Position numbers and translations under genes: made by a program | NCBI RefSeq assembly: GCF_006345805.1 | Contig: NC_043026.1 | Location: 11,569,751-11,633,750, forward strand | Origin: Octopus sinensis | Taxonomy: Eukaryota | Reading direction: 5' to 3' | Length of the DNA stretch: 64,000 nucleotides | In this document: positions 1 to 30,136 of the stretch, one piece after another | How the letters are laid out: the number at the start of each line of letters is the position of its first letter | How positions within the stretch are numbered: position 1 is the first letter of the stretch | The notes under the pieces: generated by a model | Told to the model about the DNA's origin: nothing | Databases searched by the model: none | Seen by the model: only the letters and a program-made list of their open reading frames with translations

Positions 1-528
1 CACAAACATGTTCATACAGGAGAGAAACCATATCATTGTGATATCTGTGGTAAATCATTCTCTCAGAGTGGAACCTTAACTAATCACAAACGTATTCACA
101 CAGGAGAGACACCATATCACTGTGATATCTGTAGCAACTCGTTCTCTAAAAGTCGTGAATTAACTATTCACATGCGTATTCACACGGGAGAGAATCCATT
201 TCACTGTGATATCTGTGGTAAATTTTTTTCTCGAAATCAGCACCTGACTGAACATAAACGTATTCATACAGGAGAGAAACCATATTGCTGTAATATCTGT
301 GGGAAATCATTCTTTCGAAGTGGTGATTTAACTATTCACATCCGTATTCACACTGGAGAGAAGCCATATCAGTGTGATATCTGTGGTAAATCGTTCTCTC
401 AAGGTCATCACCTAACTGAACACAAACGAAGTCATACAGGTGAGAAACCGTATCATTGTGACACCTGTGGCAAATCATTCTCTGAAAGTGGTAAGTTAAC
501 CAGACACAAACGTACTCACACAGGATAA
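1..528 (+). CDS. ZNF-1: tandem C2H2 zinc-finger protein, 3' part only (frame open from base 1; 6 complete fingers in window)
   Basis: Frame 1 reads [61 protein letters not shown]... without a stop into the listed ORF 172..528. CX2C-X12-HX3H units with TGEKP linkers; ends HTG-TAA-TAG. Confidence 0.9.
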
Positions 529-8390: not shown

Positions 8391-8859
8391 AAAAAAATGG
8401 AAAGGTCTGTTTTAGGTGTGTGTGGTGGGGGTGACTGTGCGCCAGGTCCGTCGGAGAGGTGGGTGACATTTCTAAAATTTAAAATTTGATGGGAGGAGGG
8501 GTGAAATTTGAAAAAAAAGGTGTTTTTCTTGCATATTCGTAATCCCCGATATCTAAAATGTGGGAATCTGTAAAAAAATTTTTCATAAAAAATGCATTTT
8601 TTGAGTGGGGAGGGGCGATGTGGGGGAGGGTAAAATTTGAAAAATTTTTTTTTTGTATATTCGTCATCTCCGATATCTTAAACGTAGAAATCCGAAAAAG
8701 CTTTTTTTCAAAAATGCATTTTTCAAAGAGAGGTGCAAACTTGCATTAGCCTAGGGGGTTTGGGACATAATAGGAGGTTAGGGTACTTGATTCGACACAA
8801 AAAATCCGAGTGTTTTTTTTTTTTTTTCTTAGTGAAAATATGGAAATTCAGTCTTGATT

Positions 8860-9430
8860 TTTCGCCCACACATCAAATTGCAAGAATATCGTAATGTACA
8901 ACATTTGAAGGGTATTTAATGAGCGTTATATCTTAAAATATCCATTTTTTCACACTTGTGTAGTTATGTGTCAATCTGTTTAATTCATTGATTTTAGACA
9001 AAAGCGGCGGAGGAAAAAAATAAAAATCTATGTCTCACAAGTAACATCAGAAGGTTTTAAATTATACACGACCAACTACTTTTTACTAAATTAACTGTAT
9101 TATTATAATCTTACCTGTTACGCTACAGGAATTTGTGTTTTAAGTGAAAAAGCTCGAATTACAACAGAATATATTTCAGGACGCCATTTCAATGAAATTA
9201 ATTTTCATAACAGAAATTATAAAATTAGACTCGGAAACACAAATGGCGAAACGTACTTTATTTTTTTAAGCTCAAAGGAAAATACATAGGTATTAAATAT
9301 CTGAAGCAATTGATTTGAAATACGCAAGGTATCACTGTTAAATGTATTGGAATTGTTAAAATTTTTATTCCAAATAAAAATAATAATTGAATTTTGTATA
9401 TTTTCGTTTTAGTATGTTTCGTTTAACCCA
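8860..9430 (-). promoter_or_regulatory. Candidate promoter/non-coding exon 1 of ZNF-2 (block repeated at about 20468..20930 and 25865..26500)
   Basis: The block recurs collinearly upstream of ZNF-2, ZNF-3 and ZNF-5. All three copies keep a CAG|GTAAG donor (exon ends at 9115, 20639, 26031). CGCCATTT (YY1-like) motifs occur in two of the copies. Confidence 0.5.
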
Positions 9431-9721: not shown

Positions 9722-10279
9722 TTAAAATATATAATAGAGAAACAATTGGCTCTGTAGTACGGATGTCTTGTTTTCATAAGTTTGGAATTAAAATCTTCCA
9801 CCAAACCTTAATCACAATTTATGTTCATAATACTAGCTAAATGATAACTAAGTTATTTTACTAAATTCTTTGGTATATTTAAAGTAATTGAAAGAAACAG
9901 TGAGCATCTCAAAATAAATACAGTAACGAAAGGACATCACACACTTGTCGTCTCCCGTCATTCATTCAAACCTGGATTGAGACACTGTGGTAATAGGAAA
10001 TATGTCAACAGGGATCTGGACATCGGAGCAAGGGTCTGTCCTACTAAGGACGTCAGACCTGGAGGTAGAAGGCGGAGCTGAGTGAACAACATTAACTCTG
10101 ATGGGTGAGACTCGGGTGACGTGCAGGTGATGCAGACAGGCTGGCTGTAACAGGAGAGGTGGGGGAAGGTTAGCGATCGAGATGGGAGCTGGATGAAGGG
10201 CGTTAAAACTGGCGGTGGGCTTCAGGGCGAGAGGGGATGGCGGCAGGCTGGTTATAAAAGGACGAGCAAGATTAATACC

Positions 10280-10855: not shown

Positions 10856-10999
10856 CAAGATTAATACCAGCCAAATCTGACGTTGGAAGAGGTGATGGAG
10901 AGATGGGGATACGAGTTAACTGCCCTAGAATGTGATGGCGTAGATGGAGAACGAGAAGACAACGGCTGATAGGGTGTGATGAAATCGTTTAAGCATGCT

Positions 11000-11268
11000 G
11001 GCGATCTTTCGATACTAGTAACATAACTGTCACTTATAAACCACGTGGGTTTATTTACATTTCTGAAGATATATATATATATATATGTACATACATACAC
11101 TGCGTGACATAGTGAGCAAGGGTCACTGGGTTGACATCTCGTGAGTGTACCTTTAATTCAAAGGGTTACAATGCGCAGTGTATGTATGTACATATATATA
11201 TATATATATATCTTCAGAAATGTAAATAAACCCACGTGGTTTATAAGAGACAGTATCGAAAGATCGCC
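11000..11268. mobile_element. Foldback MITE with GGCGATCTTTCG termini
   Basis: TIR GGCGATCTTTCGATAC / GTATCGAAAGATCGCC and about 100-bp inverted arms around a roughly 70-bp spacer; no TSD seen. Confidence 0.7.
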
Positions 11269-11974
11269 TGTAAACCAGCTGTGTTGCAGCATCTGCTTAG
11301 AACTGCAGATGGTCACACTGCTTTTGAGCCTCTCCTGATTTGGTATAGAGCATGAATGCTTTAACAATATTTGTGTTTACTGTATACCAAACCAAGTATC
11401 ACCATCATTTATTACCAGATCAGTAAACCTGGTAATAGCTCATCATCTGATCTCCACTTCTCGTGCACTTGTTATAATCGGGGTTCACAAACAAAGTGCC
11501 ATTTTTATCTACATGTGACTCTGCACAGGTAGATAGAAAATTGATAGCCAACAGGTTTCTTTTCTGCTGTTGGTTTATTCTGCATAACAATTAGTTTCCG
11601 CAGTGATTGCTTCAAACAAACTAAGAGGAAAAAGAAATAGAGTAATGGTTTTTGCCTTCTGGGAAAGACTATGACTAGGTGGAGTCTTCAGATAAATTTG
11701 TCAGAAAAACTGTTTTCACACTTTTGTTCCAGCCACGAAGAAAAAATCTCCAAAAATTCACAGTGGTCAGATATCACAGCAAATAATGTCAGATACTCTA
11801 ACTCAATTGTTTACGGAGTGAAATCACGTTTCCATGAAAGTACTGAGATTTGCACTAAAATTCATATTTTAATATAACTAGGTTATTATAACCGTTTTGG
11901 TGCCGTTTACCGAGAAAATTTTCAGCCAGATTTGGGAATTTTGCTAACAAAAACGTTAAACACCTTTCCTAATG

Positions 11975-12125
11975 CATCAAGAGCTAAGATGAATAAGAAG
12001 GGGCTAAGAACTGAGCCCTGGTAAACTCCTACCTGTACACCGAATTCATTGCTATACACATTACAGACTGTCATCTTACAGACAGCACCACAGTAAATGG
12101 CTTGGATGGTTCTCACCATTCAATC
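11975..12125 (-). mobile_element. RTE-clade reverse transcriptase fragment
   Basis: VRTIQAIY...EFGVQVGVYQGSVLSPFLFILALDAL (GxxQGSxLSPxLF RT motif). Confidence 0.75.
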
Positions 12126-12196
12126 ATCCTAGCTTGTACAGCAACTGCTTGATACAAGAGAGAGGGTTGCTGTCAAGTTATTTCTTCGTGCGGATA

Positions 12197-14235
12197 TGAT
12201 TGATTGATTGATTGATTGATTGATTCTAGTTTCAGCTTATGAGCTGTGGCCATGCTGGGGCACCGCCATTTGGTGTTGCTACTTGGTTTCACTTCATGGA
12301 GGCTTTCTAGCAACTGCTATTTGGTGCATGAGAGAGTTCGATGCAGCTGCCCTCATCTGCCCCTCCTGCCGTGAAGTTGGTTCATCTGGGACACCTGACA
12401 GGAAGAGATCCAGCTTCATTTTAAAGACATCTGTATCCACCCCATGCAGGTCTCTCAGGTTCTTCGGGAGGATATTGAAGAGCTGTGGGCCTCGGAAGCC
12501 CAGGCTATCACAGAATCTTGTCCTACATCTCGCGTCATCACTCATGTAAATACCTAGGTCACGCACTGATTGTGCCTCTGGGATTGCTATTCCTCCGGGT
12601 CCTGTGTATTCATTGGGTATTGCATTTAGTTTTGCATGCTGATAGTATAGAGCTTGAAACTTTTCAGCATTGAACTGCATGCTATTCTTTTCGGCCCACT
12701 TGTATATTTCGTCCAGCTCATATTGCAGGTGCCTAGTGTCTTCAGGGTTCTGTATTGCCTGTGAAACTTTTGTATCATCTGCATAACTTGTGATCGTGGC
12801 TCTCTGCGTGGCTGAGGGCATGTCTGAGAGGGCCATTATGAACAGTAGTGGTCCCAGAACAGTGCCCTGCGGAACACCGCTCACTATTTGCGTGTTAATG
12901 GAAGTGGCCCCATTGGCCACTACCACCTAACTTCTATCTTTCAGAAAGTCATGAAGCCATTCTCCCAGTTTTCCAACTATGTTGAGATCACGCAGTTTGT
13001 GACATATCATTCCATGATCGACTTTATCAAAGGCCTTTGCAAAGTCGAGATATATCACTTCCACATTTGAGTGGTTGAGCAGCCGTTTCAGCACCCAGTC
13101 ATAGTGTTGTAGGAGCTGAGTTAAACAGCTTCTCCCTGGTCGGAAACCATGTTGGGTGTCGGGCAGCAAGTCATTCTCTTCAAGGAAGGTGATCAGCTTC
13201 CTTCTGACTATTCGTTCCATGACCTTGCTGATGTGTGAGGTCAGAGAGATAGGTCTATAGTTCTTGGCTTCCGCTCTGCTACCTCCTTTATGAATGGGGC
13301 ATATTTTACCTTCCTTCAGTTTTCTTGGAAGTTTGCCAGCTGCAAGGAAGCTCTGAAAGAGGAACTGCAGTGGTCTTGCTAGGACTCTCTTACATGCTTT
13401 TAGGAGGATTGCCGGGAATCCATCGGGGCCAGTAGCTGAGTCTGTTTTCATTTCATCTATAGCCTTGATTACATCGTCTTCCTTTATATCGATGTAATCT
13501 ATCGTCGCCGCCTCTGATTTTATATCTACAGTGGTAAAAAAGTCAGTTGGATTGGTGATTTGGAGATGTCCAAGGGGTGGAGTGAAAACACTCTTGAATT
13601 GCTCATTCAGTATTTCACTTACCCTCATTGGTTTTCCTGTAAGTGTGCCATCCTTTTCGAGGAGTGGCCCTATTCTACAGTGCACCGTAGCTGTTTCTTT
13701 GGCATACCTGTAGAAAGCTCTGGGGTTAGATTTTATGTTGTCTATAGCCCAGGCTTCTTTGTCTGCTCTTTCCTTTTCATGAGACATTTTTCGATTTCCA
13801 ACAGTTTTATTTTTAGGCGGGACTTTTCACTGCTTTCAATCTGTTTGTTTAGGCGATTTGAAAATTTTGTACGCCGTCTCATTAAAATTTTCCTCTCTCT
13901 GGGGATTTTGTTCTTGTGTACAGTGGCCTTTCTCTCTGGGACACATTTGTAGCATATGGCTTGCATTACAGACATGAATTGTTGAAGTTTCACGTCGATG
14001 TCTGGCGAGGAGAGACATTTAGGCCAGTTTTGTTTGAGGATCTCTTTCTCAATTTGTTTCCAGTTTGCTTTATGGTAGTTCAAGATTCTGAGGGTTTCTT
14101 GTAGGCTGCATGTCCGTGCTCTCTTTTGGCCCGTACATGGTCAGCTCTATCATGTTGTGATCCGAGAGTAGTGTCGGTGTCACTTTCACATTATGGATGA
14201 GATCCATGTCATTTGTGAAGCAGAGATCCAATATA
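12197..14235 (-). mobile_element. CR1/L2-group LINE, 5'-truncated, inactivated ORF2 (end of endonuclease plus RT), (TCAA)n tail
   Basis: ILDLCFTND...LSDHNMI (APE end), NYRPISLTS, QHGFRPGRSC, YLDFAKAFDKVDH, GVPQGTVLGPLLF, YADD. Has a frameshift near 13780, an in-frame TAG at 12927-12929 and an in-frame internal deletion near 12540 (SDDA|RCRT). TCAA repeats at about 12197-12225. Confidence 0.9.
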
Positions 14236-14571
14236 TATACAATATAAAAAAAACAAAAGAGCTAAGAAAAATAACTCAGCAACAAAGTGAATTTGGACAA
14301 TAATAGGAAAAATAAAGTCATATTAAAAACAATATAAAATAAATTTGTCGTTTATTTAAACCATCATCATAGATTTGAATTTTCACATTGACATAGTTAT
14401 TGTAGTATATGAATACCTATTTGTTTTGTTAAGTCAATCCTTGGAAAAAATGATTTGCTAAAGATATGCTAATATGGTTTCTCCTTGTAAGAATAAGGCT
14501 TCTTGTATGATTTTATTTGTGTTATGTAATCATATATTGAGAGAACAATTTACCACATTGATATTATATGT

Positions 14572-15212
14572 CGGTGGCACGTAAAAGACACCATTCGAGC
14601 ATGATCGTTACCAGCATCACCTTACTGGCACCTGTGCCGGTGGCATTTGTAAAAGATTTGAGCAAGGTCATTGCCAGTACCGCCCGACTGGCCCCGTGCC
14701 AGTGGCACGTAAAAGCACCCACTACACTCTCGGAGTGGTTGGTGTTAGGAAGGGCATCCAGCTGTAGAAACTCTGTCAGATCAAGATTGAAGCCTGATGC
14801 AGCCATCTGGTTTGCCAGTCCTCAGTCAAATCGTCCAAGCCATGCTAGCATGGAAAGCGGACATTAAATGATGATGATGAGGCCAGATCAAGATTGAAGC
14901 CTGGTGCAGCCATCTGGTTTGCCAGCCCTCAGTCATACGTCCAACCCATGCTAGCATGGAAAGCAGACGTTACATGATGATGATGATGATGAGGCCAGAT
15001 CAAGATTGAAGCCTGGTGCAGCCATCTGGTTCGCCAGCCCTGTCATACATCCAACCCATGCTGGCATGGAAAGAGGACGTTAAACTATGATGATGATGAT
15101 GAGGCCAGATCAAGATTGAAGCCTGGTGCAGCCATCTGGTTCGCCAGCCCTCAGTCAAATCGTCCAACCCATGCTAGCATGGAAAGCAGACGTTAAACGA
15201 TGATGATGATGA
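14572..15212 (+). mobile_element. SINE-like family C with four tandem ~110-bp tail modules, inserted just 3' of the ZNF-3 stop
   Basis: Tail unit AGATCAAGATTGAAGCCTG...CGTTAAACGATGATGATGAGGCC starts at about 14778, 14884, 14996 and 15106. The flanking degenerate-finger sequence is contiguous in ZNF-2. Confidence 0.85.
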
Positions 15213-15220
15213 TGTGGTTA

Positions 15221-16759
15221 CTATCCCGTGTGGGTACGTTTGTGTTTAGTCAAAGTGCTCTTTACATAGAAAGATTTGCCACAGATGTCACAATGATATG
15301 GTTTCTCTCCTGTATGCATACGTTTGTGAATAATTATTTCACCATGTCGAAGGAATGATTTGCCACAGATATTACAGCAATGTGGTCTTTCTCCTGTATG
15401 TGTACGTTTGTGGTCAATTAGATGCTGATTTTGTGAGAATGAGTTGCCACAGATGTCACAGTGATACGGTTTCTCTCCTGTGTGACTACGTTTGTGATAA
15501 GTGATGCCACTCCTAACCGCGAATGATTTACCACAAATATCACAACAATAAGGTTTCTCACCTGTGTGAATACGCAGGTGTATCTTTAAGTGACTACTTC
15601 CAGTGAATGATTTACCGCAAACCTCACAGTGATATGGTTTCTCTCCTGTATGAATCCGTCTGTGTTCGGTTAGGTTAAGACTATCAGAGTATGATTTACC
15701 ACAGATATCACACTTATATGGTTTTTCTCCTGTATGTACACGTCTGTGTTTAATTAAGCTGCCACTTACAGTGAATGATTTCCCACAAATATCACAGCAA
15801 TAAGGTTTCTCTCCTGTGTGAATACGTGAGTGTCTCATGAAGCTACCACGTCCAGTAAATGATTTACCACAATCACCACAATGATATGGTTTCTCACCTG
15901 TATGAATGCGTTTGTGTTCAGTTAGGTGATAATTATCAAAGTACGATTTACCACAGATATCACAATGATATGGCTTCTCACCTGTATGTATACGTTTATG
16001 CTTATTTAAGACATAATCAATAGAGAATGATTTACCACAGATATCACAGTGATATGGCTTTTCTTCTGTGCAAATATTCTTGTGTGAAATAAGTTCACTA
16101 TTTTCAGAGAATGATTTATCACAGATGTTACAATAAAATGGCTTGTCTCCTGTGTGAATACGTTTGTGTTTAGTTAAGTGACGATTGAAAGAGAATGATT
16201 TACCACAGACATCACAGTGATATGGCTTCTCTCCTGTATGAATAACACGTTTGTGTTCAGTTAGATGTTGATTTTGAGAGAATGATCTACCACAGATATC
16301 ACAGTGATATGGCTTCTCTCCTGTATGACTTCGAATATGATTAATTAGATGCTGATTTTGAAGGAATGATTTGCCACAGATATTACAGTGATATGGTTTT
16401 TCTCCTGTATGAATACGCTTGTGTGTAGTTAAGTTACAACTTTCAAAGAATGATTTACCACAGATATTACAACTAAATGGTTTCTGTTCCGTATGAATAT
16501 ATTTGTGTTTATTTAAGTAATGATTTTCAGAGAATGATTCACCACAGATATCACAGTGATATGGTTTCTCTCCTCTATGAACAATACGTGTATGTCTGCT
16601 GAGACTAGACTTATGAAGGAATGATTTACCGCAGACATCACAGTTATGTGGTTTCTCTCCTGTATGAGTGTATTTGTGTGTTGTCAATTTATGACTTTCA
16701 GAGAAAAATTTCCCACAGATATCACAGTGGTGTGATGCTTTACTTTTCTCTTTATCCAT
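15221..16759 (-). CDS. ZNF-3: C2H2 zinc-finger protein, 512 aa, 18 fingers
   Basis: ORF 15221..16813 starts at GTG; first ATG at 16759 (MDKEKSKASHHC). The upstream ~400 nt is nearly identical to ZNF-2. Confidence 0.9.
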   Translation of the reverse strand: MDKEKSKASHHCDICGKFFSESHKLTTHKYTHTGEKPHNCDVCGKSFLHKSSLSRHTRIVHRGEKPYHCDICGESFSENHYLNKHKYIHTEQKPFSCNICGKSFFESCNLTTHKRIHTGEKPYHCNICGKSFLQNQHLINHIRSHTGEKPYHCDICGRSFSQNQHLTEHKRVIHTGEKPYHCDVCGKSFSFNRHLTKHKRIHTGDKPFYCNICDKSFSENSELISHKNICTEEKPYHCDICGKSFSIDYVLNKHKRIHTGEKPYHCDICGKSYFDNYHLTEHKRIHTGEKPYHCGDCGKSFTGRGSFMRHSRIHTGEKPYCCDICGKSFTVSGSLIKHRRVHTGEKPYKCDICGKSYSDSLNLTEHRRIHTGEKPYHCEVCGKSFTGSSHLKIHLRIHTGEKPYCCDICGKSFAVRSGITYHKRSHTGEKPYHCDICGNSFSQNQHLIDHKRTHTGERPHCCNICGKSFLRHGEIIIHKRMHTGEKPYHCDICGKSFYVKSTLTKHKRTHTG

Positions 16760-18264
16760 GCCTCTATGCAAATCAATACTTTTCAATTGTATTTTATATC
16801 TAAACTTATTCACACATCATTCAACTTCCATTGTTTATTTTCTCTCTTGACAATATAGAGATGTGTATCTTCTTTATGTTTCTATACTTCATTCCTATTA
16901 AATATTTCTTGTGAGTTTTGTCAATATATGGACTGAATTGTAAACTCCTTTTTTAATCTGTCCAAGTGTAATTCATATGCAAAGACGTCTTGTTTACATT
17001 CCAGACAGTCAACAAAAGAATTATTGCTATCAGTCTCAGTATACGAAAAATATTTGCTTGTCGTTTGGTATAGATTTGTATAACTTCTTCCTTGAGAGTT
17101 TAAGATGTAAGAAAAACTTTTCGATGCCAATTGTTATTCTGAAATAGTAGAAAAACAACAGTATAAGATACAAGGGTTACTTAAAATAAATTATATGCAA
17201 ACACCCTCCCTGCATATGAAAAAGACAGTTATTGGAATCTTTATTTATTTATGTAATTTGTATTAATTTTTAAAATAAAAATGCCTACATTAAGAAAAGC
17301 ACTTTCAACATTAAAAAAAATGTAAATTCTTAATGATATGCAATAAAAGAAAACTATGCATGAACCTCAGATGTTATACATGAAAGGTGAACACCATAAA
17401 ATAAGCATTAATCCGGAGATATTGAATTCACCTCAAGAGACGTCATTGATTGGTTGAAATTGCCGAAATGCAAGAAATTAAAGAACAAATAGCTTATAAA
17501 CTACAGAATTTTCTCAATAAAGCCAAAAGAAAAAGATGTTTTATAAACACATTCTACCAGTATACGAAGTTTAAAAGTGATTAGTTGCAAAGAATTTATT
17601 TTTAAAATGTGCAGGTCAAAGCGAAAAGATCCAATAATTTTTTAAACAAAGTAAATAAAACACAAAGTAAGGATCGACTAGTCACGACTAGCTAGTGCGG
17701 ATTCGAGTGTACGCGAACCGGGACCACTCTTCTGAAGTAGTACCTTATTTTCCATATTCTTAATCTCCATATTATTCCACGTAGATTGAAAAAAAAAATT
17801 TGGAAGTAAGTTAAAATTAAAAAATTTGTGGTGGGGAGGGGGGGGATTAAACATTTTGAAAACATGGTCTTTGGTATTATTCGGAATCTCCGTCATCGAA
17901 AACATAGGAATCTGCTTCAAAGAGAAAAAGGTGGGTAAAAGGCGGTTTTTCCGTACAGGTGTACTTGTAAACATTAACCAAAATTTTTGTTGAAGGGAGT
18001 AAAGAAGTTTCGATTTGTTTCCTCATAACTTTATGAAAACTGGATATATTTTTTTTAACAAAGTTTTCTACAAATCTGTGTCTGATAGTAAAAAATGACG
18101 ATTACAGAATTTGATGTGAAAACAAAATTTGGGATGGGGGTCACAAACCTCGATTTTGTTTCTTCATACGTTTTCCAGAAGTATGTTAATTATCACCACC
18201 CTTATTTTTCGTCCACATACCAAATTCCAAGAATACCGTAATGTACAATATTTCAAAGGTTTTT

Positions 18265-19473
18265 ATGTATACGTTTATGTTTATTTAGAACATAATCGAT
18301 AGAGAATGATTTACCACTGATATGGCTTCTCTTCTGTGCAAATATTCTTGTGTGAAATAAGTTCACTATTTTCAGAGAATGATTTATCACAGATGTTACA
18401 ATAAAATGGCTTGTCTCCTGTATGAATACGTCTGTGTTTAGTTAAGTGACGATTGAAAGAGAATGATTTACCACAGATATCACAATGATATGGTCTCTCT
18501 CCTGTATGGATAATACGTTTGTGTTCAGTTAGATGTTGATTCTGAGAGAATGATCTACCACAGATATCACAGTGATATGGCTTCTCTCCTGTATGACTTC
18601 GAATATGATTAATTAGATGATGATTTTGAAGTAATGATCTACCACAGATATTACAGTGATATGGTTTTTCTCCTGTATGAATACGCTTGTGTGTAGTGAA
18701 GTTACAACTTTCAAAGAATGATTTACCACAGATATTACAACTAAATGGTTTCTGTTCTGTATGAATATATTTGTGTTTATTTAAGTAATGATTTTCAGAG
18801 AATGATTCACCACAGATATCACAATGATATGGCTTCTCTCCTGTATGAATAACACGTTTGTGTTCAGTCAGGTGCTGATTTCGAGAAAAAGATTTGCCAC
18901 AGATATCACAGTGAAATGGATTCTCCCCCATGTGAATTCGCATGTGAATAGTTAATTCACGACTCTTAGAGAATGAGTTGCTACAGATATCACAGTGATA
19001 TGGTGTCTCTCCTGTGTGAATACGTTTGTGATTAGTTATGGTTCCACTCTGAGAGAATGATCTACCACAGATATCACAGTGATATGGTGTCTCTCCTGTG
19101 TGAATACGTTTGTGATTAGTTAAGGTTCCACTCTGAGAGAATGATCTACCACAGATATCACAGTGATATGGTGTCTCTCCTGTGTGAATACGTTTGTGAT
19201 TAGTTAAGGTTCCACTCTGAGAGAATGATCTACCACAGATATCACAGTGATATGGTGTATCTCCTGTGTGAATACGTTTGTGATTAGTTAAGGTTCCACT
19301 CTGAGAGAATGATTCACCACAGACATCACAGTTATGTGGTTTCTCACCTCTATGAACAATACGTGTATGTCTGCTGAGACTAGACTTATGAAGGAATGAT
19401 TTACCACAGACATCACAGTCATGTGGTTTCTCTCCTGTATGACTTCGAATATGATTAATTAGATGCTGATTTT
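18265..19473 (-). pseudogene. ZNF-4: chimeric zinc-finger cassette (13 complete fingers in one open frame 19471..18311, no family start codon, 3' frameshift)
   Basis: Hand translation upstream of the listed ORF gives HKSSLSR, four QSGT(L/I)TN fingers and KSRELTI before RNQHLTE. An 11-nt deletion at about 18317 causes the frameshift; both ends are truncated. Confidence 0.85.
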
Positions 19474-19478
19474 ATTTT

Positions 19479-20466
19479 AAAACTAGCAGTATCGCCCGGC
19501 GTTGCTCGGGTTTGTAAGGGAAATAACTATATAAGCATTTTTAGAGAGTTATAGCCAAAAAATGGAAAAAAAGAAAATGGTAAATTTTTTTTTAAATCGT
19601 TGACTCATCGTAGACATTTTTAGAGAGTTACTTCCCATATATAATAGCGAAAAAATGCCTTAAAATGGAAAAAAATGATGGTAAATAATTTTTTTAAATC
19701 GTTGACTCATCGTAGACATTTTTAGAGAGTTACTTCCCATGTATAATAGCGAAAGAATGCAATAAAATGGAAAAAAATGATGGTAATTTTTTTTAAAATC
19801 GTAGACTCATCGTAGACGTGCGCTAATATCCAGAAGGGCTCGAGATGAATCACGACTATAAGATACCCGGTTTTGGTTAAACTGCACCGCAAAATGTGGG
19901 AGTAGTTAGGAATCTAAATAGTAGGAGACAGACACACAACTTCACTTTTATATATAAACTAGCAGTATCGCCCGGCGTTGCGCGGGTTTGTAAGGGAAAT
20001 AACTATATAAGCATTTTTAGAGAGTTACTTCCCTTATAGATGCCAATTCGGGCTTTCTTGGCCATTTCTGTTTTGGTGTCTTCAAGCCATGAAGTCGTTG
20101 TTCTAAAAGAACGCTGGTCTCCTTGACAACGCTTTACGACGTTGATTTCCTTACACTCCCTTCCCCACAGCTTCACGAGGGAGGGAAGAAGGGGGAGAAG
20201 CAAACAGGTGCAGGTGTGACCATGGACGCCAACTCCACCGCCATCGACACACGAAAAATTATGCATTAAAATGGAATAAAAAATTATGTTAAATTATTTT
20301 AAAAATCGTAGACTCATCGTAGACGCGCGCTAATACCCAGAAGGGCTCGATATGAATCAAGACTATAAGATACCCGAATTTGGTTAAACTGCACCGCAAA
20401 ATGTGGGAGTAGTTATGAATCTAAATCGTAGGAGACAGACACAACCTTACTTTTATATATAAAGAT
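19479..20466 (+). mobile_element. Two head-to-tail Helentron/HINE-like non-autonomous elements (about 19479..19956 and 19957..20466)
   Basis: 5' ACTAGCAGTATCGCCCGGCGTTGCTCGGG (short palindrome), 3' GGAGACAGACACAC...CTTTTATATATAAAGAT, T-rich target and no TSD. Copy 1 has internal ~105-bp tandem repeats; copy 2 carries about 230 bp of unrelated sequence. Third copy at 29764..30136. Class assignment is inference from this architecture. Confidence 0.6.
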
Positions 20467-21081
20467 ATCCATTGTTCATCCTTGTGCAGTTCTGTCTCAA
20501 TCTGTTTAATTCATTGATTTTAGACAAAGCGGTGGAGGATAGAAAATGCAATCGATGTCTCACAAGCAACATCAAAAGGTTTTAAATTATACACGACCAA
20601 CTACTTTTACTAAATTAACTGTATTATTACAATCTTACCTGTTATGCTACAGAAATCTGGATTTTAGTGAAACAGCTTCAATTACAACAAAGAAAGTAAT
20701 TATACGACGCCATTTCACCGAAGTAGATTTTCACAACAGAAATTATAAAAATAGACTCGGAAACACAAATGACGAAATACACTTTGTTTTATTTTTTAAG
20801 CTCCAAGGAAAGATACATAGGAATTATGTCTCAAACAATTAACTTGAAATATGCAAAGTGTCGTTGTTAAATGTATTGGAATTGTTAAAATTTTATTTCA
20901 AATAAAAAGAATAATGATTCAGTAAATTTCTGTAACTTCAATGGCTAATAATAGATTTAGTACTGCGACGGAAGTTACAATATAATTTTATTTTGAATGT
21001 TTCTGGAGAAGAATAATGTATCAATCTTGATTTAAATGAATTCAAACAATAAATGACGTATCATTCTCACTTTTACGTTTT

Positions 21082-21444
21082 GGCAACCTTTCGTCTCTAG
21101 TTGATTTCCGTAAAAAATTTTTTTTTTTTACATATGGGCTTGCGGGAACTTTTGAAGTAATATACATACATATACATATACACCGAGTAAAAAATTTCAG
21201 TTATCTCTTTCTTTCACACATTACTCTCTCTGTCTCTTCACACACACTAACAGAAGCACTTCACTTACACAACATACTGTCTGTCTCCCACACCCCATCA
21301 AACACACACACACATGTACATCAATGCTTCACATGCACGGTAACTTCAAAAGAACTTCCCTCGTCATACAATCGCTTTCTCTTAGTCTCTTTCGCTCTCA
21401 TTACTTCAAAAGTTCCCGCAAGCCCATAGAGACGAAAGATTGCC
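21082..21444. mobile_element. MITE family M1 (GGC(A/G)ATCTTTCG TIR), both arms internally deleted
   Basis: Same body as 25421..25842, 36362..36786 and 57102..57303. Confidence 0.75.
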
Positions 21445-21774
21445 GTTTTTTTTTATCGTTTCGCTTTGGCCGACAGATTTTTAAAATAATTTCTTTGTAA
21501 CTAAAACATTTTAAACTTCGTATACTGGTAGAATGTGTTTATAAAACATCTTTTTCTCTTGGCTTTCTTGAGAAAATTCTGTAGTTTGTAAGATATTTGT
21601 TGTTTATTTTCTTGCATTTCGGCAATTTCAACCAATCATTGATGTCTATTGAGGTGAAAACGATTTCTGCCGTAGTGTGTCAACAACATTTTCTGGCGGT
21701 GTCATATGAAAATAGTGTTCAGTAACTTTGTGTGTAACTCCTTGTTTTAAAAATTATCATTCTAAATAAACTCT

Positions 21775-22647: not shown

Positions 22648-24182
22648 CTATCCTGTGTGAACGAGTTTGTGCTTGATTAACTGACCACTTTGGGGGAATG
22701 ATTTGCCACAAATATCGCAGTGATAAGGTTTATCACCTGTGTGAATACGTATGTGCATTGTTAAGTTCCAACTTTCAGAGAATGATTTGCCACAGGTGTC
22801 ACAATGATATGGTTTCTCACCTGTATGACTTCGTTTGTGTTTAGTTAGGTGATAACTTTGAGCGAATGATTTGCCACAGATATCACAATGATATGGCTTT
22901 TCTCCTGTGTGTATACGTTTGTGTTTATTTAAGTTATAGTTATGAGAGAATGGTTTACCACAGATATCACACTGATATGGTTTCTCTCCTGTATGAACAC
23001 GTATGTGCTTAATTAAGCTGCTATTTGCAGAGAATGATTTTCCACAAATATCACAACAATATGATTGCTCTCCTGTATGAATTTGTTTGTGTTTAATGAA
23101 GTAACTATTAACAGAGAATGATTTGCCACAGATATCACAGTGATATCCTTTCCTTCCTGTATGAATACGTCTGTGTTCAGTTAGATGATGATTTTGAGGG
23201 AATGACTTACCACAGATATCACACTGATATGGTTTCTCTCCTGTATGAATACGTTTGTGTTTAATTAAGTTGCTACTTCCAGCGAATGATTTACCACAGA
23301 TGTCACAGTGATACGGCTTCTCTCCTGTATGCATGTGCTTGTGTGTCTTTAAGTTACCACTTCCAGAGAATGATCTGCCACAGATATCACACTGATATGG
23401 TTTCTCTCCTGTGTGAATACGTTTGTGTTTCACCAAGGAACTTTTTACAGAGAATGATTTGCCGCAGATATCACACTGATATGGTTTATGTTTCTCACTT
23501 GTATGACCTTGTTTGAGTTGAATAAAGCTGCTACCTGCAGAGAAGGGTTTACCAGAAATGTCACAATATGGTTTCATTCCTGTATGAATACGTTTGTGAC
23601 GAGTTAGGGTACCCTCTGAGAGAATGATTTGCCACAAATATTACAGCAAAATGGTTTCTCTCCTGTGTGAATATGCTTATGAGAAATCAATCCACCGTTT
23701 TGAGAGAATGATCTGCCACAGATATCACACTGATATGGTTTCTCTCCTGTGTGAATACGTTTGTGCCTAGATAAGTTATTACTTCGTAAGAACGATCTGC
23801 CACAGATATCACAATGACATGATTTCTCTCCTGTGTGACTTCGTTTGTGTTCAGTTAGGTGATGACCTTGAGAAAATGATTTACCACAAATGTCACACTG
23901 ATACGGTTTCTCTCCTGTATGATTAAGTTTGTGTTTTGTTAAGTTACCACTTGCAGAGAAGGATTTACCACAAATATCACAGTGATATGGCTTCTCTCCT
24001 GTATGACTACGCTTGTGTATTCTTAAGCTACTATTTTTAAAGAATGATTTGCCACAGATATCACAATGATATGATTTCTCGCTTGTATGAATATATTTGT
24101 GTTTCATTAATTTATGACTTTCAGAGAAGAATTTCCCACAAACATCACAATGGTGTGATGTTTTCCCTTTCTCTTTGTTCAT
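22648..24182 (-). pseudogene. ZNF-5: C2H2 gene of about 18 fingers, interrupted by a 1-nt frameshift in finger 7 (true lesion or assembly error)
   Basis: ORFs 23604..24236 and 22648..23637 join into S-Q-(R/S)-G-T-L-T-R-H if one base is added at CAGAGGGTACC (about 23607-23617). Start ATG at 24182 (MNKEKGKTSHHC). Confidence 0.8.
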
Positions 24183-24775
24183 GTTACTATGCAAACCAAT
24201 TCTTTTAAACCGTGTTTTATATTTAAACTTATTCACACATTATTCATCTTGCATTCTTTTTCTTTTCTCATGACAATATACAGATATTTATCTTCTTTAC
24301 ATTTCTATATTTCATTCCTTTTAAATATTTCTACTTCAGTGATTTTTGTCAATATCTGGATTGAGTTGTAAACTCTGTTTTAATTCAAATGCAATGTCAC
24401 ATTCTAGTCAACAAAAGAATTATTTCTATCAATCTCAGCATACAAAATATACAAGCTTGTAATTTGACATAGATTCATATAAGGAAATTTATATCTTTCC
24501 TGTCTAACATTTTCTTTTAGATTTTAAAATATGATAGATATTGCTGATGTATACCATATATACAATTCTTTGGCGCCAATGTCTGAAATAGTAGAGAAAC
24601 GACAGTGTAAGACACAGAGATCACTTGGAATACAACAGAATAAATTTTAGTACATTTTTAGAGATTTTTAGATCGTAGTTTGGAGAATAGTGAAGAATAA
24701 GCTCGTTTGTTTATCTTGTTATTAATTAAATCTGGGCAAAACTACAGATGCGTGCCTGCCAAATGCGTTACTTAT

Positions 24776-25400
24776 TTCTTATTCAGAATTTTCAGGGATT
24801 ATTTTAGATGGTGCAGATTAGGGTCATATCGGAATTAGTAGTGAAAAATCTTTTCGGAAGCGTGTAGAGGAGTTTCAATTTGCTTCCTCGACATTCTGAA
24901 AGCTGGATATCTTTTGCATCAAATTTTCTACTAATCTCTTCCTGACAGTGTAGATGACGATAATATGGGAGTTTGATGTGAAAACAAAATTTGGGGTGAA
25001 GTCGGATAATTCACAAACCAACATTGATTTCTCGTACGTTTTCAAGAGGTACGTGAATTATCGCCACTCTTATTTTTCGTCCACACATCATATTCTTTCC
25101 GAAAAATACTTATTTCTTATTCAGAATTTTCAGGGATATATTTTAGATGATGCAGATTGGGGTCATATCGGAATTAGTAGTGAAATGTCTTTTCGGAAGC
25201 GTGTAGAGGAGTTTCAATTTGCTTCCTCGACATTCTGAAAGCTGGATATCTTTTGCATCAAATTTTCTACTAATCTGTTCTTGAGAGTGTAGGAGTTTGA
25301 TGTGAAAACAAAATTTGGGGCGAAGTCGGATAATTCACAAACCAACATTGCTTCCTCGTACGTGAATTATCGCCACTCTTATTTTTCGTCCACACATCAT
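24776..25400. repeat. ~330-bp imperfect tandem duplication in the ZNF-5 upstream/intron block
   Basis: TACTTATTTCTTATTCAGAATTTTCAGGGA...GGAGTTTGATGTGAAAACAAAATTTGGGG occurs twice; homologous to 17990..18260. Confidence 0.8.
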
Positions 25401-25420
25401 ATTCCGAGAAAATCATAATG

Positions 25421-25842
25421 GGCAATCTTTCGTCTCAAGTAGACCTTTCCGTCGATTTCCGTAAAAGAATTTTTTTTTTTTTTTACATATGGGCTTGCGG
25501 GAACTTTTGAAGTAATGAGAGCGAAAGAGACTAAGAGAAAACGATTGTATGACGAGGGAAGTTCTTTTGAAGTTACCTCTGTCTCTTCACACACACTAAC
25601 AGAAGCACTTCACTTACACAACATACTGTCTGTCTCCCACACCCCATCAAACACACACACACACACATGTACATCAATGCACCCATGCACGGTAACTTCG
25701 AAAGAACTTCCCTCGTCATACAATCGCTTTCTCTTAGTCTCTTTCGCTCTCATTACTTCAAAAGTTCCCGCAAGCCCATAAGTAAAAAAAAAAAAAATTT
25801 ACGGAAATCGACGGAAAGGTCTACTAGAGACGAAAGATTGCC
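25421..25842. mobile_element. MITE family M1, ~90-bp TIRs
   Basis: GGCAATCTTTCGTCTCAAGTAGACCTTTCCGTCGATTTCCG ... CGGAAATCGACGGAAAGGTCTACTAGAGACGAAAGATTGCC. Confidence 0.85.
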
Positions 25843-26525
25843 TATCGTTTTTATTTTAAATAATCCATTTTGCCCCTACGTATAAATCTGTCTAAATCTG
25901 TTTAATCAATGACTTCAGACAAAGCTGTGGAGAATGAAAGAACATCGATGTCTGACAAGTAACACCAAAAGGTTTTATATTACTCATGTCCAACTACTTT
26001 TACTAAAATATTTGTATTATTACATCTTACCTGTGATTCTACGTAAATCTGTGTTGATAGTGAAACATCTTCAATTACAACAATTATTCCTTTAATTACG
26101 CCACTCAGCAAAGTGTATAGTTTCGCAAAAGAAATTCTAAAAAACCGACTCGGAAACGCAAATGACGAAATGTATTTTGTTTCTGCTTTTTAAGCTCCAA
26201 GGAAAGATATATAGGAATTATGTCTCAAACAATTAACTTGAAATTGAAATATGCAAAGTGTCGTTGTTAAATGTATTGGAATTGTTAAAATTTTATTTCA
26301 AATAAAAAGAATAATGATTTAGCAAATGACGAAACGTACTTTGTTTCTGCTTTTAAGCTCCAAGAAAAATACCGAGGTATTATTATATCTCAAGCAATTA
26401 ACTTGAACTGTGTAAAGTGTATTGGAATTGTTAAAATTTGATTTCATATAAAAATAATAATGGAATTTCTGTATATTTCCGTTTTAGAACTTTTCGTTTT
26501 CTCCAGTTCATTTGTACTGGGAAAT

Positions 26526-29763: not shown

Positions 29764-30136
29764 AAACTAGCAGTATCGCTCGAGTTTGTAAGGGAAATAA
29801 CTATATAAGCCTTTTTAGAGAGTTATAGCCAAAAAATAGCAAAAAAATGCATTAAAAATGGGAAAAAAAATAATGGTAAATTTTTTTTTAAATCGTTGTC
29901 TCATCGTAGACATTTTTAGAGAGTTACTTCCCTTATATAATATCGAAAAAATTGATGGTAAATTTTTTTTAAATCGTAGACTCATCGTAGACGTGCGCTA
30001 ATACCCAGAAAGGCTCAATATGAATCACGACTATAAGATACCCGGTTTTGGTTAAACTGCACCACAAAATGTGGGAGCAGTTAGGAATCTAAATCGTAGG
30101 AGACAGACACACAACTTCACTTTTATATATAAAGAT
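29764..30136 (+). mobile_element. Helentron/HINE-like non-autonomous element, single copy
   Basis: Same 5' ACTAGCAGTATCG and 3' GGAGACAGACACACAACTTCACTTTTATATATAAAGAT as 19479..20466. Confidence 0.6.

What the first reader, a model, noticed from the sequence alone, without database searches (positions are those of the whole stretch)
18262..20466. Shuffled zinc-finger cassette fused to a tandem rolling-circle-type element, inserted in the first intron of ZNF-3
Seen: in the ZNF-2 locus, ...GTAATGTACAACATTTGAAGGGTATTT (8890-8917) runs almost directly into ATATCCATTTTTTCAC (about 8938). In the ZNF-3 locus the same two segments (about 18238-18265 and 20466) are 2.2 kb apart. The gap holds the ZNF-4 finger cassette and two head-to-tail Helentron-like units. 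The cassette is a mosaic: ZNF-3 finger-5 end, ZNF-3 finger 2 (HKSSLSR), four 84-bp copies of a ZNF-1 finger (QSGTLTN), ZNF-1 fingers KSRELTI and RNQHLTE, then ZNF-3 finger-6 end (KRVIH) and ZNF-3 fingers 3-9. All joins fall in the conserved His/linker/Cys region, and the frame stays open for 387 codons. Known: Helitrons/Helentrons capture and move host sequence, and head-to-tail units are a rolling-circle signature. Inference: this may show a transposon-coupled finger-shuffling route for building new ZNF specificities in the cephalopod expansion. The cassette is sense to its host gene and has an internal ATG (18943, 210-aa ORF), so it could also be spliced in as an alternative exon.
Basis: partly seen in the sequence, partly recalled or inferred. 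Interest (0 to 1): 0.82.

Follow-up and report, generated by a model that had tools for sequence, protein, structure and literature searches.

The report
Zinc-finger mosaic beside a Helitron pair
An intron of an octopus zinc-finger gene holds a 1.2-kb patchwork of fingers copied from neighbouring genes and, 15 bases away, a separately inserted pair of small Helitron transposons, so the transposon did not capture or shuffle the fingers.

Summary
The window is Octopus sinensis chromosome CM016888.1. Compared with paralogous introns, the putative first intron of ZNF-3 carries about 2.2 kb extra. This is a 1.2-kb open, sense-oriented mosaic of zinc fingers plus two head-to-tail repeat units.

Two corrections follow. 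First, the repeat is a canonical non-autonomous Helitron on the minus strand, not a Helentron. It has 5'-TC, 3'-CTAG, a GC hairpin 12 nt from the 3' end, A|T insertion and no target duplication. The same family forms an array of at least eight head-to-tail units with precise CTAG|TC joins in O. vulgaris.

Second, the cassette is not fused to the Helitron or inside it. About 9-15 nt of original intron (19468-19482) lie between them, colinear with both paralogs. These are therefore two insertions.

All internal cassette joins sit in register within 8-15 nt of identity between finger repeats. Two of them are exact 339-nt shifts, one period of the four-finger higher-order repeat. The outer joins show only microhomology. 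This fits homology-guided copying from the neighbouring ZNF-3 and ZNF-1-like arrays, followed by 84-bp amplification and an 11-bp frameshifting deletion. Transposon-coupled shuffling is not supported. The cassette does lie where Helitron 3' read-through could pick it up. Interest is modest.

The parts
18204..18263 (.). Left intron flank, homologous to ZNF-2 8857-8918 and to ZNF-5 about 25370-25417
   Evidence: BLAST 85% identity; three-way alignment of the reconstructed empty site
18264..19473 (-). Mosaic zinc-finger cassette, 13 whole fingers plus truncated fingers at both ends. The junction zones 18264-18267 (TATG) and 19468-19473 (GATTTT) are microhomology shared with the intron, so the net insert is about 1.2 kb
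18311..19471 (-). Open frame of 386 codons plus a stop. It has no start codon until 18943 (210-aa ORF). It is ended by a frameshift from an 11-bp deletion near 18314
   Evidence: An annotated 1004-aa gene model ends at 18311
19016..19330 (-). Four tandem 84-bp QSGTLTN finger units. The three downstream units are 97.6-98.8% identical. The first is a hybrid
   Evidence: TRF period 84
19468..19482 (.). Remnant of the original intron (GATTTTATTTTAAAA) between the cassette and the Helitron array. Its first 6 nt overlap the cassette as microhomology
   Evidence: Colinear with ZNF-5 (13/15) and ZNF-2 (11/15) once both inserts are removed
19483..19958 (-). Helitron unit 1, the downstream unit in the element's sense. 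It ends ...CCCGAGCAACGCCGGGCGATACTGCTAG-3' followed by host T. It lacks the 5' TC. It holds about 2.5 internal 102-bp repeats
19959..20465 (-). Helitron unit 2, the upstream unit. It starts 5'-TCTTTATATATAAAAG after host A and ends in the hairpin plus CTAG-3'. It carries a unique 214-bp internal segment (20037-20250)
20466..20793 (.). Right intron flank plus the putative exon 1 and promoter (donor-like CAG|GTAAGA at 20639/40), homologous to 8926-9267 and 25887-26194
15221..16759 (-). ZNF-3 coding exon (512 aa from ATG 16759). It is the donor of the finger-5 end, finger 2, finger-6 end and fingers 3-10 of the cassette, at constant offsets of -3114, -2775, -2607 and -2268/-2279
37..267 (+). ZNF-1 fingers 9-11 (QSGTLTN, KSRELTI, RNQHLTE). 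They are the closest available relatives (95%) of the middle of the cassette, and they lie in the opposite genomic orientation
8857..8960 (.). Paralogous empty site in the ZNF-2 intron
29767..30135 (-). Solo copy of the same Helitron family. It has 5'-TC and 3'-CTAG, the hairpin is lost to a 10-nt deletion, and it is inserted A|T with no target duplication and no ZNF fragment beside it

Best explanation
Two separate insertions lie 9-15 nt apart in an AT-rich stretch of the putative first intron of an Octopus sinensis C2H2 zinc-finger gene.

(1) A dimer of a small non-autonomous canonical Helitron. It entered by rolling-circle transposition between an A and a T. It probably moved as a two-unit piece taken from a tandem array.

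(2) A 1.2-kb finger cassette made by homology-guided DNA copying, meaning break repair or replication with template switching, or serial gene conversion. The main template was ZNF-3's own finger exon 2.3 kb downstream. A ZNF-1-like array, which lies in inverted orientation, supplied the middle. Each switch occurred in register inside the 8-15 nt of identity that finger repeats share. Two of the switches moved by exactly one 339-nt higher-order period. The product was joined to the intron through microhomology of at most 6 nt and without target duplication.

Later changes were tandem amplification of one 84-bp finger, short conversion patches and an 11-bp slippage deletion that ends the frame. 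The cassette is most likely a non-functional pseudo-exon. It stays open because every event was in register and because it is only 3-5% diverged.

Shown: the anatomy, the donors, the junction positions, the Helitron identity, and the intron remnant between the two inserts. Inferred: the repair or replication mechanism, the order of events, and the lack of function.
For: - Source identified: L001 from O. sinensis CM016888.1 is 100% identical to the window.
- Empty site in two paralogs.
- Helitron features in three window copies: 5'-TC, 3'-CTAG, a 16-nt GC palindrome 12 nt from the 3' end (DNA fold -4.5 to -4.9 kcal/mol), host A on the 5' side and T on the 3' side, and no target duplication. These are the defining features quoted in PMC4067079 and PMC4778049.
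- The same family forms an array of at least eight head-to-tail units in O. vulgaris, with two precise CTAG|TC joins.
- The units are only 90-95% alike and differ in internal content. The dimer was therefore not made on site from one template.
- With both inserts removed, 19468-19482 joins the flanks into a sequence colinear with ZNF-2 and ZNF-5.
- Cassette segments match ZNF-3 at 96.5-100% and ZNF-1 at 95%. The next-best matches are far worse.
- The switch intervals are 8-15 nt of shared identity. The intra-ZNF-3 jumps are -3114 to -2775 and -2607 to -2268, both 339 nt, which equals the TRF period of 339.
- The outer joins share TATG and GATTTT with the inferred target.
- The ZNF-1 piece is inverted relative to its source, which fits conversion or template switching and not unequal crossing-over.
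Against: - No second individual, species or read set could be examined. The order of events, and even their independence in time, is untested.
- The target sequence before insertion is inferred from paralogs that are only 85% identical, so the microhomology lengths are approximate.
- True donors may be paralogs outside the window. ZNF-1 is only 95% identical, and the first Q finger has no exact donor.
- Two insertions 9-15 nt apart is a striking coincidence and could mean a causal link.
- Differences from the donors are 15 synonymous against 15 non-synonymous codons. This is not the roughly 1:3 ratio expected of a freely drifting copy, though both lineages contribute to the count.
- An annotated gene model uses the cassette's stop codon.
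Confidence: 0.62

Rival explanations
1. The Helitron array and the cassette are one composite rolling-circle element. The transposon captured ZNF sequence, by 3' read-through or during replication, shuffled it, and inserted the whole 2.2 kb in one event.
For: - The cassette lies on the 3' side of the Helitron's terminator, in the element's sense orientation. Helraiser experiments show read-through transduction from exactly this position (PMC4778049).
- Helitrons are known to carry gene fragments.
- The tandem units show that terminator bypass happens in this family.
Against: - The 9-15 nt between CTAG and the cassette match the resident intron at that very position in both paralogs. A composite would have had to delete those bases and bring near-identical ones with it.
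- The far end of the cassette (...CGTATACAT|AAAAACC) has no CTRR and no hairpin, and it abuts host A rather than T.
- The best donors are the host gene's own exon 2.3 kb away and a neighbouring gene, not a distant locus.
- The joins are in-register homologous exchanges.
- No ZNF fragment lies beside the 3' end at four other insertion sites of the family or its relatives.
Confidence: 0.08
2. Coupled but not captured. Helitron activity at this donor site, such as transposase nicking at or beyond the 3' terminus or a failed read-through, produced a break a few bases downstream. That break was repaired by template-switching synthesis on the neighbouring ZNF arrays and so created the cassette.
For: - The cassette starts 9-15 nt from the CTAG end, on the side where bypass and termination events occur (PMC4778049).
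- The junctions are of the microhomology type and carry no target duplication.
Against: - This is a single case.
- None of the other four sites shows any templated insertion by the 3' end.
- The homologous spot in ZNF-5 was hit by an unrelated MITE. This suggests an AT-rich, insertion-prone stretch, as expected from the AT-rich target preference of Helitrons.
- The order of events is unknown.
Confidence: 0.15
3. The cassette is a functional exon, for example an alternative 3' exon of a read-through transcript or an ORF starting at ATG 18943, kept open by selection.
For: - The frame is open for 386 codons in sense orientation.
- A 1004-aa annotated model ends at its stop codon.
- The cassette holds 10 acceptor-like (CAYACAG|G) and 8 donor-like (TGTG|GTARAT) motifs in frame.
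- The synonymous to non-synonymous count is 15:15.
Against: - The native acceptor and start codon were not copied.
- The frame is closed by an 11-bp deletion that destroys finger 10.
- In-register events and low divergence keep a frame open without selection.
- Neighbouring models are plainly artefactual. ZNF-3, an intact 512-codon ORF, is annotated as a 100-aa product spliced inside its own finger array.
- No transcript data could be examined.
Confidence: 0.1
4. Assembly artefact. The mosaic or its 4 x 84-bp array results from mis-joined or mis-polished reads in a highly repetitive ZNF cluster.
For: Near-identical 84-bp repeats and many similar paralogs are difficult for assemblers. Only one assembly could be examined.
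Against: - The cassette differs from every available donor by 3-5%, with its own private substitutions, an 11-bp deletion and clean unique junctions to intron sequence on both sides. A chimeric join of reads would give stretches identical to the donors.
Confidence: 0.05

Closest known systems
Canonical non-autonomous Helitrons (Helitron1 type, such as Helibat/Helraiser relatives), including their head-to-tail arrays
   Same: - 5'-TC and 3'-CTAG termini.
- A GC hairpin about 11-12 nt before the 3' end.
- Insertion between A and T with no target duplication, and an AT-rich 3' flank.
- Precise CTAG|TC head-to-tail joins, seen in the O. vulgaris array.
- No coding capacity.
   Different: - The elements are very short (370-510 bp) and have a variable number of internal 102-bp repeats.
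- In the window dimer the downstream unit lacks its 5' TC.
- No autonomous partner was seen.
- The ZNF cassette lies outside the element.
Helentrons / HINEs (DINE-1, Cg_HINE of oysters)
   Same: They are also non-autonomous rolling-circle elements with central tandem repeats between two conserved end modules and a palindrome near the 3' end. They are common in molluscs.
   Different: - No 11-15 bp subterminal inverted repeats.
- Insertion is A|T, not T|T.
- The termini are TC...CTAG.
This is therefore not a Helentron.
Helitron gene capture by 3' end bypass (maize Helitrons, HelibatN3, Helraiser transduction)
   Same: Host coding sequence sits immediately downstream of the Helitron terminator, in the same orientation.
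   Different: Here the flanking bases between the terminator and the host fragment are resident intron, and the fragment has no de novo Helitron end. The arrangement is at most a pre-capture state, not a transduced copy.
In-register finger gain, loss and exchange in tandem C2H2 arrays (vertebrate KRAB-ZNF clusters, the PRDM9 minisatellite-like array). This comparison is from general knowledge and was not tested here
   Same: Recombination, conversion or slippage between 84-bp finger repeats at the conserved linker and framework codons. This gives new finger orders while the frame is preserved, and it includes tandem duplication of single fingers.
   Different: Here the product is not inside the gene's array. 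It is an ectopic 1.2-kb copy placed in the gene's own upstream intron, and it combines two genes, one of them inverted.
Templated insertions and complex duplications from microhomology-mediated break-induced replication, fork stalling with template switching, or synthesis-dependent strand annealing. This comparison is from general knowledge
   Same: Donors lie nearby in cis. There are multiple template switches, one to an inverted donor. Microhomology occurs at the outer junctions, there is no target duplication, and the same short template is copied repeatedly.
   Different: The internal switches use 8-15 nt of homeologous identity in strict repeat register, rather than 2-5 nt of random microhomology. 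Part of the mosaic, namely the 84-bp amplification and the short patches, looks younger than the rest. This points to several events rather than one.

Membership tests
Canonical Helitron | 5' terminus TC joined to host A | tested here: met
   Unit 2 reads ggata|TCTTTATATATAAAAG and the solo copy reads tgata|TCTTTATATATAAAAG. Three O. vulgaris units start with TC. Unit 1 lacks the TC at the internal join.
Canonical Helitron | 3' terminus CTRR joined to host T | tested here: met
   CTAG is present in all three window copies. It is followed by host T (TTTTAAAATAAAATC at the array end, TTTTTAATAAAAAC after the solo copy) or by the next unit. The same holds at the end of the L006 array and in two L005 relatives.
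Canonical Helitron | 16-20 nt palindrome about 11 nt from the 3' end | tested here: met
   CCCG(A/C)GCAACGCCGGG is followed by 12 nt (CGATACTGCTAG). The DNA fold gives -4.5 and -4.9 kcal/mol for units 1 and 2. The solo copy has lost the palindrome through a 10-nt deletion.
Canonical Helitron | No target-site duplication; empty site restores A|T | tested here: met
   Removing 19483-20465 gives ...TTTTAAAA|TATCCATT, colinear with ZNF-2 (TTAAAATATCCATT) and ZNF-5. The flanks of the solo copy carry no duplication.
Canonical Helitron | Autonomous partner encoding a Rep/helicase protein with matching termini | not testable with these tools
   No whole-genome search of O. sinensis was available. No Rep/Hel ORF was seen in the window's ORF list, though that list was not screened against protein families.
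Helentron / HINE | 11-15 bp subterminal inverted repeats near both ends | tested here: not met
   The inverted-repeat scan of 19440-20500 found no pair linking the two ends of a unit. The alignment of the three copies shows none either.
Helentron / HINE | Insertion within a TT dinucleotide, with T runs at the boundaries | tested here: not met
   Both window sites are A|T. The T run first taken for an element end (19470-19478) is resident intron.
Helentron / HINE | Central tandem repeats between conserved end modules | tested here: met
   A 102-bp repeat is present, 2.5 copies by TRF in unit 1. The number differs between copies. This feature is not exclusive to Helentrons.
Helitron-captured gene fragment (3' transduction) | Host fragment contiguous with the element and ended by a new terminus, moved as one unit to a new A|T site | tested here: not met
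   Resident intron bases 19468-19482 separate the two. The distal end of the cassette has no CTRR and abuts host A. No second copy exists in the window or in the five outside loci.
Homology-guided templated insertion / ectopic gene conversion mosaic | High-identity donors nearby; switches in register within shared identity; microhomology at outer joins; no target duplication | tested here: met
   Donors lie 2.3 kb away (ZNF-3, 96.5-100%) and about 18 kb away (ZNF-1-like, 95%). Switch intervals are 8-15 nt. Two jumps are exactly 339 nt. The outer joins share TATG and GATTTT with the target, as inferred from paralogs.
Processed retrocopy | Poly(A) tail, target-site duplication, copy reaching the 3' end of the mRNA | tested here: not met
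   The cassette stops at finger 10 of ZNF-3's 18 C2H2 fingers. The AAAAA beside it is resident intron (AAATA in ZNF-2). There is no duplication.
tRNA-derived SINE (considered for the repeat units) | tRNA-like head with A and B boxes, simple-repeat or A-rich tail, target duplication | tested here: not met
   ARAGORN found no tRNA. Rfam gave no match at E<=1. There is no target duplication.

The most novel reading that the evidence does not exclude
The locus is a snapshot of the step before Helitron gene capture, and perhaps of a causal link. Nicking or terminator bypass at the 3' end of a resident Helitron array created the break that was repaired with a patchwork of neighbouring zinc fingers. 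The resulting open finger cassette now lies 9-15 nt downstream of the terminator. The next read-through transposition would export it, ready shuffled, to new sites. If that were general, Helitron ends would act both as initiators and as carriers of finger shuffling in the octopus ZNF expansion.
Probability: 0.1. Interest if true: 0.75.

Novelty: new member of a known kind. Interest (0 to 1): 0.35.

Why it matters
Octopus genomes carry a very large lineage-specific expansion of C2H2 zinc-finger genes. How new finger combinations arise in it is an open question.

This locus is a clean, base-resolved example of finger shuffling. A paralogous empty site shows what was inserted. The donors lie within 20 kb. 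Every join can be placed within a few bases. The pattern indicates that ordinary homology-guided copying between neighbouring arrays, including shifts by one 339-nt higher-order repeat unit, is enough to build a new 13-finger open frame without a transposon.

The locus also documents a small canonical Helitron family in Octopus sinensis and O. vulgaris that forms long head-to-tail arrays. It also puts a shuffled cassette where Helitron read-through could mobilise it, which gives a concrete hypothesis to test genome-wide.

On the practical side, gene models in this cluster fuse or split finger arrays through cryptic in-frame splice motifs. ZNF counts and isoforms taken from the annotation should therefore be treated with care.

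Tried and rejected
1. Three searches of the large protein database and the representative search (collected) were swamped by generic multi-finger proteins. They found no parent gene with the cassette's finger order and no close orthologue. They did return Octopus proteins, and one of those led to the source locus.
2. Exact-protein look-ups for the 210-aa cassette ORF, ZNF-3 and the 371-aa ZNF at 30968-32083 found nothing. The ZNF-3 query started one codon too early, which was my error. The true ATG is at 16759.
3. No fetched protein is a close match to the window outside O. sinensis. The orthologous O. vulgaris and O. bimaculoides loci could therefore not be retrieved.
4. A metagenome scan with a 28-nt Helitron motif found nothing.
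5. Simple tandem duplication of a 2.27-kb segment (15985-18263) was rejected. No second copy of the 1.4 kb of intron that such a duplication would carry is present.
6. The first boundaries I drew for the repeat on the plus strand, with a T-rich 5' end and GATATC at the 3' end, suggested a Helentron-like element with short terminal direct repeats. I rejected this once the paralog alignment showed those bases to be host sequence and the minus strand showed TC...hairpin...CTAG.
7. The ZNF-5 'palindrome' at the same intron spot at first looked like a foldback duplication of flank sequence. It is a MITE with three other copies in the window.
8. I considered reconstructing the 1004-aa annotated model by combining cryptic splice sites and abandoned it. 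Too many combinations give the same length.
9. dN/dS for the cassette gave 15 synonymous against 15 non-synonymous codon differences. The counts are too few, and they are shared between two lineages, so they cannot decide constraint.


Full report
**Source and setting.** The window is a cluster of C2H2 zinc-finger (ZNF) genes built from 84-bp finger repeats. A look-up of one Octopus protein returned a locus (L001: Octopus sinensis GCA_006345805.1, chromosome CM016888.1, 11,567,342-11,596,509, reversed) that is 100% identical to the window. Window position p therefore equals CM016888.1 position 11,569,750 + p. The genes used below are:
- ZNF-1: window 1-527, plus strand, cut by the window start. 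The full protein is 398 aa with 14 fingers.
- ZNF-2: 5838-7211, minus strand, 457 aa.
- ZNF-3: 15221-16759, minus strand, 512 aa.
- The cassette: 18264-19473, minus strand.
- ZNF-5: 22648-24236, minus strand.

In BLAST of 17900-20800 against the window, 18204-18265 matches 8857-8918 at 85% and 20453-20793 matches 8926-9267 at 85%. The two flanks are 8 nt apart in the ZNF-2 locus and about 2.19 kb apart in the ZNF-3 locus. ZNF-5 has the same flanks (about 25196-25431 and 25887-26194), with a different insert between them. A donor-like site (CAG|GTAAGA, 20639/40) in a segment conserved among the three paralogs, together with an acceptor-like site near 16801 just upstream of the ATG, makes 'first intron' reasonable. 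No transcript evidence was available.

**The cassette is a real mosaic, more complex than described.** I scanned the cassette in 48-nt windows against the rest of the window and then viewed it base by base against each candidate donor. In coding order the structure is:
- ZNF-3 finger-5 end (19473-19443, 31/31 identical, offset -3114).
- ZNF-3 finger 2 (19442-19336, 97%, offset -2775).
- A hybrid finger made of the finger-2 start, the 'GESFS' stretch of finger 3 and the QSGTLTN helix.
- Three more QSGTLTN units of 84 bp, 97.6-98.8% identical to one another.
- KSRELTI and RNQHLTE. The fourth Q unit plus these two fingers are 95.2% identical to ZNF-1 fingers 9-11.
- The KRVIH end of ZNF-3 finger 6 (18866-18807, 57/60, offset -2607).
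- ZNF-3 fingers 3-9 (18806-18316, 96.5%, offset -2268), with a short patch (18459-18542) that looks like another paralog.
- An 11-bp deletion, then the start of finger 10 down to 18264 (offset -2279).

Next-best matches for these segments have 7-19 mismatches per 48 nt, against 0-4 for the named donor. The assignments are therefore not chance. The frame is open for 386 codons and ends at PYQW* because of the 11-bp deletion. The first in-frame start codon is the ATG at 18943.

**Where the joins fall.** For each internal join I marked the sites that tell the two donors apart.
- Finger-5 end to finger 2: the switch lies within CATACAGGAGAGAA (14 nt).
- RNQHLTE to finger-6 end: within ACTGAACA (8 nt).
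- Finger-6 end to finger 3: within CCATATCA.TGTGAT (15 nt).
- The finger-2 to Q transition contains at least three short tracts.

All joins are in strict repeat register. The two jumps within ZNF-3 (-3114 to -2775 and -2607 to -2268) are each exactly 339 nt. That is the four-finger higher-order period Tandem Repeats Finder reports for this array. Fingers 2 and 6 are both the 29-residue type. The 507 nt that separate offsets -2775 and -2268 equal the six extra fingers. The cassette is therefore ZNF-3 fingers 2-10 with six ZNF-1-like fingers inserted in register and a finger-5 end in front.

This is the pattern expected from homologous exchange, conversion or template switching between repeats. 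It keeps the frame open automatically. The ZNF-1 piece is inverted relative to its genomic source, which rules out plain unequal crossing-over for that step. ZNF-1 as a whole does not have the cassette's finger order.

**The repeat is a canonical Helitron, not a Helentron.** I aligned the two units with a third copy at 29767-30135 and read them on the minus strand. Each has the following features:
- It starts 5'-TCTTTATATATAAAAG.
- It ends ...CCCG(A/C)GCAACGCCGGG-CGATACTG-CTAG-3', an imperfect 16-nt GC palindrome 12 nt from the end.
- It has host A before the TC and host T after the CTAG.
- It has no target duplication.

These are the defining features of canonical Helitrons as quoted in PMC4067079, and they were shown experimentally for Helraiser in PMC4778049. 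Helentron features fail: no subterminal inverted repeats and no TT target. ARAGORN and Rfam found nothing.

The family also occurs in O. vulgaris. At L006 24237-26374, an array of at least eight head-to-tail units has precise CTAG|TC joins at 24860/61 and 25151/52, variants at 24399/400 and 25447/48, and a terminal CTAG|T. Two more distant relatives that share the 3' 19 nt lie in another O. sinensis locus (L005).

In the window dimer the join is CTAG|TTTATATA, so the downstream unit lacks its TC. The units are only 90-95% identical. Unit 1 has about 2.5 internal 102-bp repeats, and unit 2 has a unique 214-bp segment. They were therefore not copied on site from one template. The simplest reading is that a two-unit piece of a heterogeneous array moved by terminator bypass.

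**Cassette and Helitron are adjacent, not fused.** The bases 19468-19482 (GATTTTATTTTAAAA) first looked like a T-rich element end, because the solo copy has a similar flank. When both inserts are removed, these bases join the flanks into a sequence colinear with the paralogs:
- ZNF-3: caaaggttttt-g-attttattttaaaa|tatccattg
- ZNF-5: ...tatcg-tttttattttaaat-aatccatttt
- ZNF-2: ...gagcgttatatcttaaaa|tatccatttt

The similar flank of the solo copy is explained by the reported preference of Helitrons for AT-rich sequence, strongest on the 3' side. So the Helitron dimer (19483-20465, 983 bp) went in between A and T of ...TTTTAAAA|TATCC.... The cassette went in 9-15 nt away. For a one-piece composite to have inserted, those resident bases would have had to be deleted and replaced by a near-identical stretch from elsewhere. 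The composite's distal end (...CGTATACAT|AAAAACC) would also lack a CTRR and a hairpin and would abut A instead of T.

The outer joins of the cassette share only TATG (18264-18267) and GATTTT (19468-19473) with the inferred target. There is no target duplication and at most a few bases are lost. That is a repair-type junction, not a transposition junction.

**Mechanism.** The best-supported account has two independent insertions.
- The Helitron dimer arrived by rolling-circle transposition.
- The cassette arose by homology-guided copying from ZNF-3's own exon 2.3 kb away and from a ZNF-1-like array. This was either one break-repair or replication event with several template switches, or an initial copy later reworked by gene conversion.

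The three near-identical Q units (at most 2.4% different) are younger than the copy from ZNF-3 (3.5% different). The short patches and the 11-bp slippage deletion also point to later events. So at least part of the history is stepwise.

Codon differences from the donors are 15 synonymous against 15 non-synonymous. This cannot decide whether the cassette itself is constrained, because the donors' lineages contribute to the count.

**Is the neighbourhood meaningful?** In the Helitron's sense orientation the cassette lies just downstream of the terminator. That is the position from which Helraiser transduces flanking DNA in about 12% of events. This allows two more interesting readings. Helitron nicking or bypass may have caused the break that was filled with fingers. 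Or the cassette may be poised for future capture.

Several points count against a causal link:
- None of four other sites (the solo copy, two L005 relatives and the end of the O. vulgaris array) shows a ZNF fragment or any filler by the 3' end.
- The homologous spot in ZNF-5 was hit by an unrelated 428-bp MITE that has three other copies in the window. This suggests an insertion-prone AT-rich stretch.
- There is only one case.

I give the coupled reading about 0.15 and true capture about 0.08.

**Possible expression.** The cassette did not bring the native acceptor or start codon. In the O. sinensis annotation, however, a gene with a 1004-aa product ends exactly at the cassette's stop codon (window 18311) and extends upstream beyond 26759, across ZNF-5. 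The cassette contains 10 in-frame acceptor-like motifs (CAYACAG|G in the H-T-G codons) and 8 donor-like motifs (TGTG|GTARAT in the C-G-K/R codons).

The same kind of motif appears to be used in the annotated 100-aa 'ZNF-3' product (P0162). That product skips from finger 2 to the linker before finger 8 within an intact 512-codon ORF. Such models are therefore suspect, and I could not inspect their evidence. The alternative-exon idea remains open but unproven.

**Limits.** Only one assembly of this locus could be examined. The protein searches were swamped by generic ZNFs, and no orthologous locus could be fetched. Three things therefore remain untested: a genome-wide search for a parent gene with this finger order, presence or absence in other individuals or species, and any genome-wide association between this Helitron family and ZNF fragments. 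These are the decisive next steps.

**Verdict.** Interest is modest (0.35). There is a roughly 10% chance of a more interesting Helitron-linked origin.

Noticed in passing
window 25418-25845 (also 36362-36790, 21082-21456, 57102-57311): A 428-bp foldback MITE with arms about 160 nt long and 90-96% complementary. One copy sits at the homologous intron spot of ZNF-5, within about 40 bp of the position hit in ZNF-3. Another copy lies just upstream of ZNF-3's putative exon 1.
   Followed up: partly
window 18311 to beyond 26759 (L001 1-8449): The O. sinensis annotation has a gene with a 1004-aa product that ends exactly at the cassette's stop codon and spans ZNF-5. It is probably a read-through or fusion model. 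Its exon structure could not be retrieved.
   Followed up: partly
window 7592-16759 (P0162, L001 10001-19168): ZNF-3 is an intact 512-codon ORF, yet it is annotated only as a 100-aa product. That product jumps from finger 2 to the linker before finger 8, apparently through in-frame G|GTAAAT and ACAG|G motifs, then to a distant last exon. Every finger carries such cryptic splice motifs, so finger-skipping isoforms or annotation artefacts may be common in this cluster.
   Followed up: partly
L006 24237-26374 (O. vulgaris CATOCA020000001.1): An array of at least eight head-to-tail units of the same Helitron family, with precise CTAG|TC joins and 176-bp deletion-derived subunits. It starts at a (GA)n microsatellite and ends about 45 nt upstream of the last exon of a DCLK1-like gene.
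   Followed up: partly
L006 9998-10378 (O. vulgaris): The annotated DCLK1-like protein P0161 begins with a 4.5-finger ZNF fragment that starts mid-finger (MHKRIH...) and is fused to kinase C-terminal exons. This is another dispersed ZNF fragment used as an exon in a model. No Helitron of this family lies next to it; the array is 14 kb away.
   Followed up: no
window 20037-20250: Helitron unit 2 carries a unique 214-bp internal segment between conserved ends. It has no match in the window or in five other loci. It may be a small captured fragment.
   Followed up: partly
L005 8410-9312 and 17155-17517 (O. sinensis, same chromosome): Two more distant Helitrons share the 3' terminal 19 nt (..GCCGGGCGATACTGCTAG|T) and a TCT(C/A)TATATATAAA 5' end. 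One is inserted in a (TA)n microsatellite.
   Followed up: no
window 22648-24236: ZNF-5 is split into two overlapping ORFs in different frames (22648-23637 and 23604-24236). This indicates a frameshift in the finger array, either a pseudogene or a sequencing error.
   Followed up: no
window 15221-16759 and 18318-19356: The ZNF-3 family array has a 339-bp higher-order repeat of four fingers, one of which has 29 residues with a five-residue H-x4-H spacing (RIVH / KRVIH). Recombination appears to follow this register.
   Followed up: partly
window 12294-13787 (-) and 54287-54685 (-): There are reverse-transcriptase-like ORFs (a non-LTR retrotransposon fragment) and a mariner-like N-terminal HTH ORF. 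Repeats rich in TATATA- and CACACA-type tracts lie at 32.7-35.6 kb and 53.2-54.2 kb.
   Followed up: no
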